Shown: positions 37,987 through 43,757 of the stretch, in pieces
Numbering within the stretch: the stretch's first letter is position 1
Layout: each line of letters opens with the position of its first letter
Notes under the pieces: model-generated
Seen by the model: only the letters and a program-made list of their open reading frames with translations
Database searches by the model: none
Told to the model about the DNA's origin: nothing
Sequence record: PQ471516.1
Direction: 5' to 3' (one strand)
DNA length: 64,000 nucleotides
Position numbers and translations under genes: made by a program

Positions 37987-38151
37987 ATGAAATATGACCA
38001 TTTAAAATACTATGCTGATAGAATAAATTATTATCCCTTTTATATAAGAAGCTTAGATGCATTAATATCAAAAAAAGTTGTATATAAACGATCTCAAGCT
38101 GATCTAACCAATATAGCATTCATTCTTGCAGTACTGTCTAAAATGGGATAA
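37987..38151 (+). CDS. MTHEEW-family microprotein 6 (54 aa, diverged)
   Basis: MKYDHLKYYADRI...FILAVLSKMG. Confidence 0.6.
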   Translation: MKYDHLKYYADRINYYPFYIRSLDALISKKVVYKRSQADLTNIAFILAVLSKMG

Positions 38152-38479: not shown

Positions 38480-38643
<164 letters not shown>

Positions 38644-39789: not shown

Positions 39790-39871
<82 letters not shown>

Positions 39872-40409: not shown

Positions 40410-41043
<634 letters not shown>

Positions 41044-41049
41044 CAAATC

Positions 41050-41354
41050 GGGCCATTAGCTCACGGTGGTTAGAGCAAACGACTCATCGACAATGGTGAC
41101 TTTCATCAGTAATGGTGATTGAAAAACTGGATGAATTCAGGGAAATCTTAACACGTAATGGTGATGACAATCCTGAGCCAAGCCCAATAAGCGTATTGGG
41201 AAGGTGCAGAGACTAGATGGTACAGTACGTTCTTACTGTGTAATACATCATTAGCGTCCGGCATCCCTATGGGATGATGATATAGTCCGTACTATTGTGA
41301 AAACTATAGATTATACGAATCGTTAGGTACTGTGTTCGACTCACAGATGGCTCA
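41050..41354 (+). tRNA. trnI: intron-containing tRNA-Ile2(CAU): exons 41050-41087 and 41318-41354
   Basis: Spliced cloverleaf GGGCCAT/ATGGCTC, GCTC/GAGC, AACGA-CTCATAA-TCGTT, CTGTG-TTCGACT-CACAG; C4-G69 and C5-G68 as in Ile2. Confidence 0.9.
41088..41317 (+). mobile_element. group I self-splicing intron (230 nt, no ORF)
   Basis: P AATTCAGGGAAA, Q AATCCTGAGC, R GTGCAGAGACTAGA, S ATGATATAGTCC; P1 U-G at the 5' splice site; terminal G41317. Confidence 0.92.
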
Positions 41355-41373
41355 CAAACTTTGAAATAAAATA

Positions 41374-42078
41374 ATGAAAATAAAATTAGAATATCCATAC
41401 AGTAATGATTGGAAGAATGGGTATATACAGATAAACCCTGAAGGTAGAAGAACTGTAATACTTTATAATTCTCCAACTGATAGAAGCAGTACTCAATATG
41501 CTAGATATCTATTAGCAGTAAAAGAAGGTAGATATTTAACTGAGTCTGAAGAAGCAGACCACATTGATAATGATTTCACAAATGATGATTTGTCTAATTT
41601 ACAAATACTTCATGTTGATGAACATCGTTATAAAACACATAAGAATGGAGTACAAGCACGATATGATTCATTTGTATGTGCTTGTTGTAATACGGAATTT
41701 TCCCGTAGACATACTAAAGTGAAATCATATACAAAATATTGTAGTGTTGAGTGTTCACAAAAAATGGTCAAGCCTCCGTCAAATACAAAGGGTGGTGAAA
41801 CATCAGTTGATTATGAAAAGGTAAAAGAATATATTAACCAAGGTTTGTTAGATACTGAAATTGCTAAAATAATGAATATTAGCAAAGGTTCCGTACTAAA
41901 TTATAGAACCAAAAATAATATACCATCAAAACATTTTGAGAAAGTAAGGATATTAGAAGATAATATTACTGAGATCAGAAAACGTTTGACAGATGGTGAG
42001 AAGAAGGTTAAGATATATGAAAGTTATGGTGTTTCGAAGAATGTATTTGCTAGGTTTTTAAAACGCCATAATATGTAA
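41374..42078 (+). CDS. free-standing HNH homing endonuclease
   Basis: ADHIDNDFTNDDLSNLQIL..H; CxxC...YCSxxC zinc module; two C-terminal HTH-like repeats. Confidence 0.85.
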   Translation: MKIKLEYPYSNDWKNGYIQINPEGRRTVILYNSPTDRSSTQYARYLLAVKEGRYLTESEEADHIDNDFTNDDLSNLQILHVDEHRYKTHKNGVQARYDSFVCACCNTEFSRRHTKVKSYTKYCSVECSQKMVKPPSNTKGGETSVDYEKVKEYINQGLLDTEIAKIMNISKGSVLNYRTKNNIPSKHFEKVRILEDNITEIRKRLTDGEKKVKIYESYGVSKNVFARFLKRHNM

Positions 42079-42085
42079 TAAATAA

Positions 42086-42159
42086 GACTCTGTAGCACAA
42101 TTCGGTGGTGCGAACGACTGTTAATCGTTAGGTTGGGGATTCGAGTTCCTCCAGAGTCG
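42086..42159 (+). tRNA. trnN: tRNA-Asn(GUU)
   Basis: GACTCTG/CAGAGTC, AACGA-CTGTTAA-TCGTT, G73. Confidence 0.92.
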
Positions 42160-42165
42160 CAAATC

Positions 42166-43600: not shown

Positions 43601-43673
43601 GCCTTCTTAACTCAGTTGGTAGAGTAATCGCCTTGTAAGCGATAAGTCATCCGTTCAAGTCGGATAGAGGGCA
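43601..43673 (+). tRNA. trnT: tRNA-Thr(UGU) copy 1
   Basis: GCCTTCT/AGAGGGC, ATCGC-CTTGTAA-GCGAT. Confidence 0.92.
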
Positions 43674-43675
43674 CA

Positions 43676-43757
<82 letters not shown>

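What the first reader, a model, noticed from the sequence alone, without database searches (positions are those of the whole stretch)
41050..41354. Group I intron interrupting a phage tRNA-Ile(CAU) anticodon loop
Seen: removing 41088-41317 restores a perfect tRNA. The core is complete: P1 UCAUCG/UGGUGA with U41087-G41096 at the splice site; P2 with a GUAA loop; P3 CUGGAU/GUCCGG; P4 UUCAGG/CCUGAG; P6a CCCAAUA/UAUUGGG; P7 GACUA/UAGUC; an extra helix after P7; P8 CAUCCC/GGGAUG; P9 with a GAAA loop; P9.0 GUA/UAC; terminal G. Established: P/Q/R/S resemble trnL-type tRNA introns, and insertion right after CAU matches the Azoarcus tRNA-Ile intron site. Characterised phage group I introns lie in protein genes. 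Inference: a self-splicing tRNA intron in a phage, to my knowledge essentially uncharacterised. It makes Ile2 tRNA supply splicing-dependent and hides the anticodon loop in both DNA and precursor RNA.
Basis: partly seen in the sequence, partly recalled or inferred. Interest (0 to 1): 0.93.

Follow-up and report, generated by a model that had tools for sequence, protein, structure and literature searches.

The report
Self-splicing intron inside a phage tRNA
A jumbo E. coli phage carries a tRNA gene (most likely the AUA-reading isoleucine tRNA) whose anticodon loop is split by a complete, evolutionarily conserved group I ribozyme intron, a combination that a 2014 review says had not been seen in phages and that genome annotators have missed.

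Summary
Window 41088-41317 is a 230-nt ORF-less group I intron (Rfam RF00028, 95 bits, E 3e-23). It sits between anticodon-loop positions 36 and 37 of a tRNA(CAU) gene (41050-41354) of Escherichia phage Turkey5, a 351-kb Asteriusvirus.

- **Exons:** joining them gives a canonical tRNA. Its junction, CTCAT|AATCG, is identical to intron-less alleles in sister phages.
- **Identity:** the closest E. coli gene in all 5426 complete genomes is the CAU tRNA-Ile (ileX type).
- **Structure:** Nine tRNA-resident copies give 98% paired cells and 31 of 71 pairs with compensatory changes.
- **Distribution:** the same intron is in 7 of 50,697 phage records (none of the 5 annotated ones marks it), in two further metagenomic tRNA(CAU) loci (one on a 349-kb contig), and at the same site in chromosomal tRNA(CAU) genes of two Gammaproteobacteria MAGs.

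The closest sequence relatives beyond the tRNA-resident copies are phage protein-gene introns (62-69%), not the Azoarcus intron (51%), and the intron has an extra P7.1/P7.1a hairpin.

One pair shows 91% intron identity against 62% exon identity, which indicates horizontal movement. Free-standing HNH genes directly follow three of the five phage exon contexts.

Splicing, lysidine modification and any defence role are untested. This is a new variant of a known kind, and I found no prior report.

The parts
41050..41087 (+). tRNA(CAU) 5' exon: acceptor 5' strand, D arm, anticodon stem 5' strand, and loop C32-U33-C34-A35-U36. It ends with the anticodon CAU.
   Evidence: ARAGORN on the joined exons. 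Identical to the intron-less WPEC5 allele except for one D-loop indel.
41088..41317 (+). ORF-less group I intron, 230 nt, with terminal G at 41317.
   Evidence: Rfam RF00028, 95.1 bits. Covariation. Boundaries fixed by the intron-less alleles.
41084..41099 (+). P1: exon UCAU plus intron CG (41084-41089) pairs with the internal guide UGGUGA (41094-41099). [quoted passage not shown]
   Evidence: U.G kept in 9 of 9 tRNA copies. The two intron-side pairs covary (CG, AU, GC).
41103..41118 (+). P2 hairpin UCAUCA / UGGUGA with a GUAA tetraloop (41109-41112).
   Evidence: 5 of 7 pairs show double changes.
41127..41133 (+). P3 5' strand CUGGAUG, which pairs with 41255-41261 (CGUCCGG).
   Evidence: 100% paired in 15 sequences.
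41137..41176 (+). P4 (41137-41142 / 41171-41176), P5 (41146-41149 / 41164-41167, with a conserved U.U) and P5a (41152-41154 / 41161-41163). The P5 internal loop resembles a tetraloop-receptor motif.
   Evidence: P5/P5a: 4 of 6 pairs with compensatory changes. The receptor resemblance is my own inference.
41177..41205 (+). P6 (41177-41179 / 41203-41205) and P6a (CCCAAUA 41183-41189 / UAUUGGG 41194-41200).
   Evidence: P6a: 5 of 7 pairs covary in the 15-sequence set, and 100% are paired.
41211..41215 (+). P7 5' strand GACUA. It pairs with UAGUC at 41283-41287 and forms a pseudoknot with P3.
   Evidence: Invariant in all 15 and all 9 sequences. This is uninformative for covariation but consistent with a catalytic core.
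41216..41249 (+). Extra bipartite hairpin between P7 and P3': P7.1 (41216-41219 / 41246-41249) and P7.1a (41223-41227 / 41234-41238), with a conserved GUAAUA internal loop.
   Evidence: 5 of 5 and 3 of 4 pairs have compensatory changes. It is an insertion relative to the Rfam consensus and to Azoarcus.
41262..41276 (+). P8 hairpin CAUCCC / GGGAUG.
   Evidence: It is lengthened by 7-14 nt in L028, L029, L032 and L033.
41289..41316 (+). P9.0 (GUA 41289-41291 / UAC 41314-41316) enclosing P9 (41292-41298 / 41303-41309) with a GAAA loop (41299-41302).
   Evidence: P9.0 GUA/UAC becomes UUU/AAA in the Klebsiella phage copies. P9 has 4 of 6 pairs with double changes. Turkey5 has one U.U mismatch in P9 that TH47 lacks.
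41318..41354 (+). tRNA 3' exon: A37, A38, anticodon stem 3' strand, variable loop, T arm, acceptor 3' strand and discriminator A. The following bases are CAA, so no CCA is encoded.
41374..42078 (+). Free-standing HNH homing endonuclease gene (234 aa, C-terminal helix-turn-helix), starting 19 nt after the tRNA.
   Evidence: ORF. Annotated 'HNH homing endonuclease' in PQ471516.1. 69% identical to the K64-1 HNH that follows an intron-less tRNA(CAU). Pfam gives only weak HTH hits. The H-N-H motif ADHIDND...N...H is read by eye.

Best explanation
The window is Escherichia phage Turkey5, a 351-kb Asteriusvirus. In its tRNA cluster, one tRNA(CAU) gene is interrupted between nucleotides 36 and 37 by a 230-nt ORF-less group I ribozyme. 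The gene is most likely tRNA-Ile2, whose C34 the host enzyme TilS converts to lysidine so that it reads AUA.

Proposed mechanism (inferred from the anatomy):
1. The precursor is transcribed as exon-intron-exon.
2. The intron folds into P1-P9 with the P3/P7 pseudoknot.
3. The guide sequence UGGUGA holds the exon end UCAU, with U41087.G41096 at the splice site.
4. An exogenous guanosine attacks after U41087.
5. The terminal G41317 then docks in P7, and the freed 3'-OH of U36 attacks after G41317. This step is helped by P9.0 and a short P10 between intron CGA and exon UCG.
6. The product is a 75-nt tRNA with the junction CAU|AA.
7. The tRNA is then end-processed, given CCA (not encoded here) and modified.

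The intron is best seen as a selfish, horizontally mobile element, not an adaptation. The family lives in phage protein genes, phage tRNA(CAU) genes, bacterial chromosomal tRNA(CAU) genes and a tmRNA gene. Its distribution among close relatives is patchy, and it has moved between different tRNA(CAU) bodies that share the 13-nt site CGACTCAT|AATCG.

Because it has no endonuclease gene of its own, spread most likely depends on homologous recombination in mixed infections. This may be stimulated in trans by the free-standing HNH endonucleases that follow the gene ('collaborative homing').

Shown: the structure, conservation, boundaries, distribution and allele relationships. Inferred: the splicing chemistry, the Ile2 identity and the mode of mobility.
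For: **Intron reality**
- Rfam gives 95 bits here and 77-104 bits in all related loci.
- Covariation supports every helix.
- The U.G pair and the terminal G are invariant.
- The minimum-free-energy fold alone recovers P3, P4, P5a, P6/P6a, P7.1/P7.1a, P8 and the tRNA acceptor and T arms.

**Boundaries and product**
- The joined exons fold as a tRNA.
- The junction is identical to the WPEC5 allele. PBECO4, A4, CRJP21 and Salmonella SD phages carry uninterrupted alleles 93.5% identical over the full 76 nt.

**Ile2 identity**
- The best hit in 5426 of 5426 E. coli genomes is a PGAP 'tRNA-Ile' with anticodon CAT.
- G1-C72 and an A/U-containing anticodon stem exclude an initiator tRNA.
- C4-G69 and C5-G68 are present. 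I recall these as TilS determinants (Ikeuchi et al. 2005); that is from memory, not tested.

**Mobility**
- The intron is present in only 7 of 50,697 phage records (2 Asteriusvirus, 5 Alcyoneusvirus). Many syntenic intron-less alleles exist, including K64-1.
- Muenster against OU509535 gives intron identity of 91.3% but exon identity of 62.3%.
- The Turkey5 exons look mosaic. Exon 1 matches the same-genus WPEC5 allele, while the T-stem base pair matches the Klebsiella phage allele.
- The same family sits at the same site in two chromosomal Gammaproteobacteria MAG tRNA(CAU) genes.

**Neighbouring endonucleases**
- HNH genes directly follow the intron-bearing tRNA in Turkey5/TH47/L027, and in OU509535 and L028 (the last two are 52% identical HNH_3 proteins).
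- There is precedent for free-standing endonucleases cutting in phage tRNA clusters (SegB, PMC13096335) and for collaborative homing (PMC3984707).
Against: - No RNA data exist, so splicing is untested.
- Turkey5 has a U.U mismatch in P9 and no encoded CCA. Both are mild signs of relaxed constraint.
- The HNH genes next to intron-bearing alleles belong to at least three unrelated families. One of them also sits next to an intron-less allele (K64-1), and the Muenster group has no HNH directly adjacent. There is therefore no dedicated partner endonuclease.
- The co-conversion signal rests on a single base pair.
- The phylogeny is too short to resolve direction of transfer. Phage tRNA introns form one clade with only 31/92 support.
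- ARAGORN and most GenBank records label such genes tRNA-Met, and the Ile2 call rests on similarity.
Confidence: 0.85

Rival explanations
1. Adaptive shield or regulator. The intron is kept because it benefits the phage. It might keep the anticodon loop out of reach of host anticodon nucleases in the precursor. It might delay or gate supply of the AUA-reading tRNA through splicing. Or it might interrupt, at the DNA level, the recognition site of homing endonucleases that cut the tRNA(CAU) gene, giving immunity in mixed infections.
For: - The intron lies exactly in the anticodon-loop DNA of a gene that is repeatedly flanked by HNH endonuclease genes.
- Endonucleases that cut phage tRNA clusters are known.
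- The ribozyme is under clear purifying selection.
- AUA makes up 12.8% of Ile codons in the window's long ORFs, so the tRNA plausibly matters to the phage.
Against: - Purifying selection on the ribozyme is equally expected for a selfish intron in a useful gene.
- Most close relatives do well without the intron.
- The mature tRNA is as exposed as any other.
- I know of no anticodon nuclease specific for tRNA-Ile2.
- The host supplies the same tRNA.
- The K64-1 HNH homologue coexists with an intron-less allele that carries the same 13-nt site. This argues against that enzyme cutting at the insertion site.
Confidence: 0.2
2. Dead intron, pseudogene. The intron no longer splices efficiently in Turkey5, and the interrupted tRNA gene is a decaying remnant tolerated because the host provides tRNA-Ile2.
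For: - Turkey5 has a U.U mismatch in P9.
- It has a G2.U71 wobble in the acceptor stem and CAA instead of CCA at the 3' end, whereas intron-less alleles have a perfect stem and CCA.
- Some relatives (Turkey3) have lost this tRNA at this site altogether.
Against: - All core helices, the U.G pair, the terminal G, P7 and J8/7 are intact and identical to the family consensus.
- TH47 and metagenomic L027 keep 99% identical copies.
- Differences from the Klebsiella phage copies are overwhelmingly compensatory.
- Conserved U.U pairs occur in the P9 of other members too.
Confidence: 0.07
3. Vertical relic. The intron was already in the tRNA(CAU) gene that an ancestor of these jumbo phages captured from a gammaproteobacterium. 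It has simply been lost many times, with no ongoing mobility in phages.
For: - Bacterial chromosomal tRNA(CAU) genes carry the same family at the same site.
- For most pairs, exon and intron identities are similar, for example Turkey5 against Muenster at 87% and 89%.
Against: - The Muenster/OU509535 pair (intron 91%, exons 62%) needs a transfer or an exon replacement.
- The intron occurs in only 2 of more than 20 Asteriusvirus records but is about 89% identical to the Alcyoneusvirus copies. Only the tRNA-intron segment of the 601-nt query aligns between the two genera, and the flanks do not.
- The tRNA-resident introns are AT-rich like the phages, while the bacterial copies are GC-rich.
Confidence: 0.15

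Closest known systems
[quoted passage not shown]
   Same: - Same host gene type (tRNA with CAU anticodon) and same insertion point directly after CAU in the anticodon loop.
- P1 built on exon CAU with a U.G wobble.
- ORF-less and compact, with tetraloops capping P2 and P9 (GUAA and GAAA here) and a P9.0 helix.
- Similar J6/7-P7 sequence (GGUGNAGAGACUAG).
   Different: - Bacterial chromosome rather than phage.
- 205 nt rather than 230 nt.
- No P7.1/P7.1a hairpin between P7 and P3'.
- Only 51% identity over 185 alignable positions, and a very long branch in the tree.
- The Azoarcus intron is biochemically proven to self-splice. This one is not.
ORF-less group I introns in phage protein-coding genes (Vibrio phage terminase large subunit, cyanophage psbA, Staphylococcus Twort-like phage introns, IMG/VR capsid-like genes)
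   Same: - Same RNA family by sequence: 62-69% identity over the whole intron, and BLAST hits in 148 phage records.
- Identical architecture, including the P7.1/P7.1a hairpin, the invariant P7 GACUA/UAGUC and the J8/7 sequence GAUAUAGUC.
- Phage-borne and without an endonuclease ORF.
   Different: - They interrupt reading frames, whereas this one interrupts a tRNA anticodon loop.
- P1 and the guide sequence are retargeted to UCAU.
- The 2014 review states that all phage introns known then were in protein genes.
Collaborative (trans) homing: ORF-less intron plus adjacent free-standing endonuclease (cyanophage psbA intron with F-CphI, Zeng et al. 2009; T3/T7-like DNA polymerase intron, Bonocora & Shub 2009; described in PMC3984707)
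   Same: - An ORF-less intron in a conserved gene, with a free-standing homing endonuclease gene immediately downstream in three of the five phage exon contexts.
- Patchy distribution of intron-bearing and intron-less alleles.
   Different: - No cleavage data.
- The neighbouring HNH genes belong to unrelated families, and one also accompanies an intron-less allele.
- The target is an RNA gene.
Cyanobacterial and plastid tRNA-Leu(UAA) and tRNA-fMet group I introns (IC3)
   Same: Self-splicing introns in bacterial tRNA anticodon loops, with a sporadic distribution that suggests lateral transfer.
   Different: - Different tRNA. For tRNA-Leu the insertion point also differs, lying within the anticodon (recalled from memory, not checked here).
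- No detectable sequence relationship in my searches.

Membership tests
Group I intron (Rfam RF00028) | Conserved core P3-P8 with the P3/P7 pseudoknot, scoring above the curated threshold | tested here: met
   95.1 bits against a gathering score of 50, E 3e-23. The helices are recovered by RNAalifold and supported by covariation.
Group I intron (Rfam RF00028) | P1 formed by the 5' exon end and an internal guide, with a U.G wobble at the splice site | tested here: met
   U41087.G41096. U.G is kept in 9 of 9 tRNA-resident and 14 of 15 family members, and the intron-side P1 pairs covary.
Group I intron (Rfam RF00028) | Terminal guanosine (omega G) at the 3' splice site, preceded by P9.0 | tested here: met
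   G41317 is invariant in 9 of 9 copies. P9.0 GUA/UAC becomes UUU/AAA in the Klebsiella phage copies, a compensatory change.
Group I intron (Rfam RF00028) | Guanosine-dependent self-splicing | not testable with these tools
   Needs in vitro transcription with GTP and Mg2+, or RNA from infected cells.
Group I intron (Rfam RF00028) | Exon ligation restores a functional gene | tested here: met
   The joined exons give a canonical tRNA. The junction is identical to WPEC5, and uninterrupted alleles 93.5% identical exist in other Asteriusviruses and Salmonella phages.
IC3 bacterial tRNA introns (Azoarcus / Anabaena type) | Located in a tRNA anticodon loop | tested here: met
   Between U36 and A37.
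IC3 bacterial tRNA introns (Azoarcus / Anabaena type) | Minimal core with P7 followed directly by P3' (no P7.1/P7.2) | tested here: not met
   A 34-nt bipartite hairpin at 41216-41249 lies between P7 and P3'. Azoarcus reads GACUAG-ACGGCAC with no insert.
IC3 bacterial tRNA introns (Azoarcus / Anabaena type) | Closest sequence relationship is to other IC3 tRNA introns | tested here: not met
   51% identity to Azoarcus, against 62-69% to phage protein-gene introns and 70-72% to gammaproteobacterial tRNA(CAU) introns that also carry P7.1/P7.1a. Only Azoarcus was available as an IC3 reference.
IA2 phage introns (T4 td, Twort, IStron ribozymes) | Two hairpins in domain 7 (P7.1 and P7.2), as defined in PMC4227781 | tested here: inconclusive
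   An extra element sits at the right place, but it is one hairpin made of two stacked helices with an internal loop (P7.1/P7.1a-like), not two hairpins.
IA2 phage introns (T4 td, Twort, IStron ribozymes) | Extended P9 domain (P9.0, P9.1, P9.2) | tested here: not met
   Only P9.0 and a single P9 hairpin lie between P7' and the terminal G.
IA2 phage introns (T4 td, Twort, IStron ribozymes) | Sequence similarity to Twort-type introns | tested here: met
   BLASTN gives 70-75% identity over intron positions 9-130 to Twort and 67 Staphylococcus phage records. The 3' half is not matched.
Mobile (homing) group I intron | Intron-encoded homing endonuclease | tested here: not met
   The 230 nt are fully taken up by ribozyme helices. 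On the tRNA strand no ORF of 40 aa or more overlaps 41088-41317. One 69-aa TTG ORF (41267-41476) overlaps its 3' end on the opposite strand.
Mobile (homing) group I intron | Intron-bearing and intron-less alleles among close relatives, with the intron more conserved than its exons across hosts | tested here: met
   7 intron-bearing phage records against many syntenic intron-less ones. Muenster against OU509535 gives 91.3% for the intron and 62.3% for the exons.
Mobile (homing) group I intron | An endonuclease that cleaves the intron-less allele at or near the insertion site | not testable with these tools
   Free-standing HNH genes are adjacent, but their specificity is unknown.
tRNA-Ile2 (CAU, lysidine-modified, reads AUA) | CAU anticodon in a non-initiator body | tested here: met
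   CAT anticodon, a G1-C72 pair, and anticodon stem AACGA/UCGUU without the three G-C pairs of initiator tRNAs. The initiator criteria are from textbook knowledge.
tRNA-Ile2 (CAU, lysidine-modified, reads AUA) | Closer to tRNA-Ile2 than to elongator tRNA-Met, with acceptor pairs C4-G69 and C5-G68 | tested here: met
   Every listed hit of a search that matched all 5426 E. coli genomes is an annotated tRNA-Ile, and the one inspected carries a CAT anticodon. C4-G69 and C5-G68 are present. Their role as TilS determinants is recalled from Ikeuchi et al. 2005 and not tested.
tRNA-Ile2 (CAU, lysidine-modified, reads AUA) | Lysidine at position 34 and charging with isoleucine | not testable with these tools
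   Needs mass spectrometry or an aminoacylation assay.

The most novel reading that the evidence does not exclude
Jumbo-phage tRNA clusters may be a previously unseen reservoir and vehicle for anticodon-loop group I introns. On this reading, the same ribozyme family shuttles between phage protein genes, phage tRNA(CAU) genes and bacterial chromosomal tRNA-Ile2 genes. In the phage the intron is retained because it breaks the DNA target of the HNH homing endonucleases that colonise the 3' flank of this tRNA gene. It would then be a three-way arms race of tRNA gene, endonuclease and intron, played out on an RNA gene. This would also give a concrete route for the long-puzzling sporadic distribution of tRNA introns among bacteria.
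Probability: 0.2. Interest if true: 0.8.

Novelty: new variant of a known kind. Interest (0 to 1): 0.62.

Why it matters
**Novelty.** Group I introns in bacterial tRNA genes and group I introns in phage protein genes are each textbook cases. An intron in a phage tRNA gene was explicitly noted as absent in the 2014 review of the field, and I found no later report.

**Annotation.** Standard pipelines miss such genes. The tRNA is unannotated in all five annotated phage records that carry it (the other two have no annotation), so phage tRNA repertoires and codon-usage arguments built on them are incomplete.

**Evolution.** The family links three habitats (phage mRNAs, phage tRNAs and bacterial chromosomal tRNAs) with one recognisable ribozyme. 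That makes the question of how tRNA introns spread between bacteria testable.

**Experimental system.** Natural intron-bearing and intron-less phage pairs exist in the same genus (Turkey5 or TH47 against PBECO4 or WPEC5), with free-standing HNH genes next door. This offers a ready system for studying trans-homing on an RNA gene.

**Tool value.** A compact 230-nt ribozyme that splices out of a tRNA scaffold may also interest people who engineer circular or scarless RNAs.

Tried and rejected
1. **Exon-intron junction scan of IMG/VR** (CGACTCATCGA..ATGGTGAC). It gave only one GC-rich chance match (L007), so it was dropped.
2. **Core-motif scan of IMG/VR**. It found 10 loci. Seven carry introns in protein genes, one (L021) is cut at the contig end in an unidentified context, and two (L023, L024) are chance matches inside ordinary coding sequence. 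ARAGORN with intron search found no tRNA halves in any of them.
3. **ARAGORN with the intron option** does detect the split gene but misplaces the intron and calls it tRNA-Arg(acg). I did not use it for boundaries.
4. **Maximum-likelihood tree of 21 introns**. It is too poorly resolved to decide whether tRNA-resident introns are one clade or which habitat is ancestral, and Azoarcus and the tmRNA intron attract each other as long branches. I used it only qualitatively.
5. **Promoter and terminator scan around the gene**. Results were no better than shuffles, so no transcription-unit claim is made.
6. **Pfam on the 234-aa neighbour** gave only sub-threshold HTH hits. The HNH call rests on the record's annotation, the visible motif and the annotated K64-1 homologue.
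7. **A single dedicated partner endonuclease.** Rejected, because the HNH genes beside intron-bearing alleles are of unrelated families.
8. **Intron presence in the host.** No match in 5426 E. coli genomes, and only two partial Bacillus hits in plasmids.
9. **Assembly artefact.** Rejected, because independent isolates from five countries and four metagenome contigs carry the intron.
10. **Subgroup assignment** (IA1, IA2 or IC3). This could not be settled, because no subgroup-specific models were available.
Full report
**Where the window comes from.** Window 40900-41500 is 100% identical to Escherichia phage Turkey5 (PQ471516.1, 351,311 bp, host E. coli) at record positions 288900-289500. Close relatives place the phage in the genus Asteriusvirus (TH47, EJP2). 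The finding lies in the phage's tRNA cluster. ARAGORN finds tRNA-Leu, Gly, Ser, Ser, Asn, Thr and Thr between 38.4 and 43.8 kb, but nothing at 41050-41354. The GenBank record has a gap there, between tRNA-Ser and an 'HNH homing endonuclease' CDS.

Rfam's group I intron model hits 40996-41309 with 95.1 bits (gathering score 50, E 3e-23). This is the only such hit in 64 kb. The model's 5' end is misplaced into the upstream spacer, so the real boundaries were fixed in other ways:
- Joining 41050-41087 to 41318-41355 gives a 76-nt cloverleaf tRNA with anticodon CAT.
- The sister phage WPEC5 carries an uninterrupted allele that reads ...AAACGACTCAT|AATCGTT... at the corresponding place, exactly the predicted ligation junction. 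Uninterrupted alleles 93.5% identical over the full 76 nt also occur in PBECO4, A4, CRJP21 and several Salmonella phages.
- A one-base shift of either boundary no longer reproduces these alleles.

**Anatomy.** I aligned the Turkey5 intron with the copies found elsewhere and mapped each helix.

| Element | Window coordinates | Notes |
|---|---|---|
| P1 | 41084-41089 / 41094-41099 | U41087.G41096 at the splice site |
| P2 | 41103-41108 / 41113-41118 | GUAA loop |
| P3 | 41127-41133 / 41255-41261 | |
| P4 | 41137-41142 / 41171-41176 | |
| P5 | 41146-41149 / 41164-41167 | conserved U.U |
| P5a | 41152-41154 / 41161-41163 | |
| P6 | 41177-41179 / 41203-41205 | |
| P6a | 41183-41189 / 41194-41200 | |
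| P7 | 41211-41215 / 41283-41287 | GACUA / UAGUC |
| P7.1 | 41216-41219 / 41246-41249 | extra hairpin, outer helix |
| P7.1a | 41223-41227 / 41234-41238 | extra hairpin, inner helix |
| P8 | 41262-41267 / 41271-41276 | |
| P9.0 | 41289-41291 / 41314-41316 | |
| P9 | 41292-41298 / 41303-41309 | GAAA loop |
| Terminal G | 41317 | |

A short P10 is possible between the first intron bases (CGA) and exon bases UCG. In OU509535 the intron starts GGUU, which can pair with exon AAUC. I read this by eye and did not score it.

**The structure is more than chance.**
- On 15 family members, 97.9% of cells form standard pairs. Column shuffles give 80.2% (0 of 500 reach the observed value), and sliding the 3' partners by 1-3 columns gives 29-42%. 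Thirty-one of 57 pairs show changes on both sides.
- On the nine tRNA-resident copies alone, 98.3% of cells pair, against 87.5% in shuffles (0 of 500) and 32-47% when slid. Thirty-one of 71 pairs have double changes, including P1's intron-side pairs, P2, P5/P5a, P6a, P7.1, P7.1a, P8, P9.0 and P9.
- P7 and much of P3, P4 and P6 never vary. That says nothing about pairing but is typical of the catalytic core.
- The single-sequence minimum-free-energy fold of the precursor recovers P3, P4, P5a, P6/P6a, P7.1/P7.1a, P8 and the tRNA acceptor and T arms, with a modest z-score of -1.8.

**Which tRNA.** ARAGORN calls every CAU tRNA 'Met', including E. coli ileX, so its label is uninformative.
- A BLAST of the spliced sequence matched all 5426 complete E. 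coli genomes, and every listed hit lies on a gene that PGAP annotates tRNA-Ile. The copy I inspected has anticodon CAT.
- The phage tRNA has G1-C72 and an anticodon stem AACGA/UCGUU, so it is not an initiator.
- It has C4-G69 and C5-G68. I recall these as the acceptor-stem determinants for TilS (Ikeuchi et al. 2005). That is a lead from memory, not a test.
- AUA makes up 12.8% of Ile codons (9 per 1000 codons) in the window's 45 long ORFs.
- I therefore take tRNA-Ile2 as likely (about 0.75) but unproven.
- The gene encodes ...GGCUCA-CAA rather than CCA, whereas intron-less and Klebsiella phage alleles encode CCA.

**Other copies of the intron.**
- In the 50,697-record phage collection the tRNA-resident form is present in seven records. 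These are Turkey5 and TH47 (Asteriusvirus), and Klebsiella phages Muenster, KP13-7, RCIP0023, phiKp_21 and OU509535 (the first four are annotated Alcyoneusvirus; OU509535 is syntenic with them). Five of the seven are annotated, and none of those marks the gene.
- One metagenome scan added a TH47-like contig (L027), an OU509535-like contig (L030), a 3-kb contig (L029) and a 349-kb contig (L028). L028 has a further tRNA(CAU) body and a 237-nt intron.
- One scan of GTDB genomes found the same family at the same site (CGACTCAT|...G|AATCGG) in tRNA(CAU) genes of two Gammaproteobacteria MAGs. Their neighbours are ordinary chromosomal genes: a 585-aa multi-pass membrane protein that resembles a KefB/C-type cation antiporter, a 371-aa protein that resembles alanine dehydrogenase, and a protein with DEAD-box helicase motifs. 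I assigned these by reading the translations and did not search them.
- The same scan found one copy interrupting the T-loop region of a tmRNA gene in a Bacteroidia MAG.
- Rfam scores all of these at 77-104 bits.
- No E. coli genome has the intron, although ileX carries the identical 13-nt site.

**Lineage.**
- Outside the tRNA context the nearest relatives are ORF-less introns in phage protein genes. These include Vibrio phage terminase genes (R16F has four introns), IMG/VR capsid-like genes, cyanophage psbA, Aeromonas terminase, Pseudoalteromonas and Ralstonia DNA polymerase, and 67 Twort-like Staphylococcus phage records.
- Identity to Turkey5 over the whole intron:

| Compared group | Identity to Turkey5 |
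|---|---|
| Other phage tRNA copies | 81-99% |
| Gammaproteobacterial tRNA copies | 70-72% |
| Phage protein-gene introns | 62-69% |
| tmRNA intron (L031) | 54% |
| Azoarcus ribozyme | 51% |

- The Azoarcus sequence was taken from the Methods of PMC8890501.
- Azoarcus runs straight from P7 into P3', whereas this family has the 34-nt P7.1/P7.1a hairpin there.
- IA2 introns are defined by two hairpins in domain 7 and an extended P9 (PMC4227781). This intron has one bipartite hairpin and a simple P9. I therefore call it IA-like and leave the subgroup open.
- The tree is too short to be decisive. The phage tRNA copies form one group with weak support, 31/92.

**Evidence for mobility.**
1. *Patchy distribution.* Within Asteriusvirus only Turkey5 and TH47 (plus metagenomic L027) have the intron. 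PBECO4, A4, CRJP21 and WPEC5 carry a 93.5% identical intron-less allele, six more Escherichia phages carry an 83-84% one, and EJP2 carries a more divergent one. Turkey3 and others lack the gene at this site. In Alcyoneusvirus, K64-1 has a syntenic intron-less allele.
2. *Intron more conserved than exons.* Muenster and OU509535 share the same locus, between tRNA-Ser(UGA) and tRNA-Asn. Their introns are 91.3% identical, but the surrounding tRNA bodies are only 62.3% identical, and P1 is retargeted by a compensatory C-G to G-C change. An intron better conserved than its tRNA exons needs a transfer or an exon swap.
3. *Mosaic exons.* In Turkey5, exon 1 equals the same-genus allele apart from one D-loop indel, while the T-stem pair 50-64 (U-A) equals the Klebsiella phage allele rather than WPEC5 (G-C). 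This is the pattern left by co-conversion, but it rests on one base pair.
4. *Island of similarity.* Between Turkey5 and Muenster, only the tRNA-plus-intron segment of the 601-nt query aligns, and the flanks do not.

**The neighbours.**
- A 234-aa HNH endonuclease gene starts 19 nt after the tRNA (41374-42078). Its homologue in K64-1 (69% identity) sits in the same place after an intron-less allele.
- In OU509535 and in L028, a different HNH_3 endonuclease follows the intron-bearing tRNA directly. The two proteins are 52% identical.
- The Muenster group has a NUMOD3-type protein, annotated HNH endonuclease, only after the next tRNA.
- Turkey3 has yet another HNH in place of the tRNA.
- The 3' flank of this tRNA gene is therefore a landing pad for unrelated homing endonuclease genes, but there is no single partner enzyme.
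- This resembles the collaborative or trans-homing situations reviewed by Hausner et al. and the SegB endonuclease in the T-even tRNA cluster. Nothing here shows that any of these enzymes cuts at the insertion site.

**What I conclude.** The feature is a real group I intron, intact by every sequence criterion, in a phage tRNA(CAU) gene that is most likely tRNA-Ile2. The best-supported account is a selfish, horizontally mobile ribozyme that splices itself out so the phage keeps a working AUA decoder. Its spread probably depends on recombination, possibly triggered by neighbouring free-standing endonucleases.

**Novelty.** The 2014 review states that all phage introns known then were in protein genes despite many phage tRNA genes. 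Six full-text searches, including the jumbo-phage genome papers for this clade, found no report of a phage tRNA group I intron. Subscription journals are not covered, so an earlier report cannot be excluded. I rate this a new variant of a known kind. The gene type and insertion site match Azoarcus and the ribozyme family matches phage mRNA introns. The combination, the phage setting and the bacterial cousins with P7.1/P7.1a are new as far as I can tell.

Noticed in passing
window 38028-38146: The GenBank record annotates a 119-nt 'tRNA-Leu' here. The stretch is AT-rich, and neither ARAGORN nor Rfam finds a tRNA in it. ARAGORN's real tRNA-Leu(UAA) is at 38480-38564. This is probably a false annotation, although the ends TTATCCC...GGGATAA are complementary.
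   Followed up: partly
window 39790-39868: Rfam reports a weak tRNA (33.3 bits) directly after tRNA-Ser(UGA), which ARAGORN does not report. By eye it has a good acceptor and T arm and an anticodon-like loop CUUCUAA (UCU), but no clear D arm and a long extra arm. It could be a degenerate or unusual tRNA.
   Followed up: no
window 41109-41119 and 41155-41165: An 11-nt direct repeat, GTAATGGTGAT, lies inside the intron (the P2 loop plus 3' strand, and the P5a loop plus 3' strand). In Turkey5 and TH47 only, the P2 5' strand UCAUCA mimics the exon/P1 strand UCAUCG, so the guide UGGUGA could mispair with it. This is not conserved in the other copies.
   Followed up: partly
window 41352-41358: The Turkey5/TH47 allele ends ...GGCTCA-CAA, so no CCA is encoded, and it has a G2.U71 wobble. 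Intron-less Asteriusvirus alleles and the Klebsiella phage alleles encode CCA and a fully Watson-Crick acceptor stem.
   Followed up: partly
window 43601-43674 and 43681-43754: Two tandem tRNA-Thr(UGU) genes, 6 nt apart, have clearly different sequences.
   Followed up: no
L031 6663-7225 (Bacteroidia MAG JAUIGE010000015.1): A group I intron of the same family (Rfam 83.6 bits) interrupts the T-loop region of a tmRNA gene (Rfam tmRNA 76.1 bits). The flanks read GGGTTCAAGATC|...|ATCCCCTCC.
   Followed up: partly
L004 770-2798 (Vibrio phage vB_VpaM_R16F): The terminase large subunit gene is broken into five annotated CDS pieces by four Rfam-scoring group I introns (72-94 bits).
   Followed up: partly
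L025 1163-1240 (Klebsiella phage K64-1): The intron-less tRNA(CAU) that precedes the HNH homologue has an unusual D stem (CTCT/AGAG instead of GCTC/GAGC). This could reflect escape from an endonuclease target, or a non-standard tRNA.
   Followed up: no
L003 2743-2827 and L002 2902-2985: ARAGORN gives the tRNA-Asn(GUU) next to the CAU tRNA in WPEC5 and Muenster as 84-85 nt, apparently with a long extra arm. The Turkey5 tRNA-Asn (42086-42160) is 75 nt.
   Followed up: no
L026 607-682 (Yersinia phage fHe-Yen9-04): A tRNA with anticodon CUA (annotated tRNA-Sup-CTA, an amber suppressor) lies about 560 nt upstream of an HNH gene related to the Turkey5 one.
   Followed up: no
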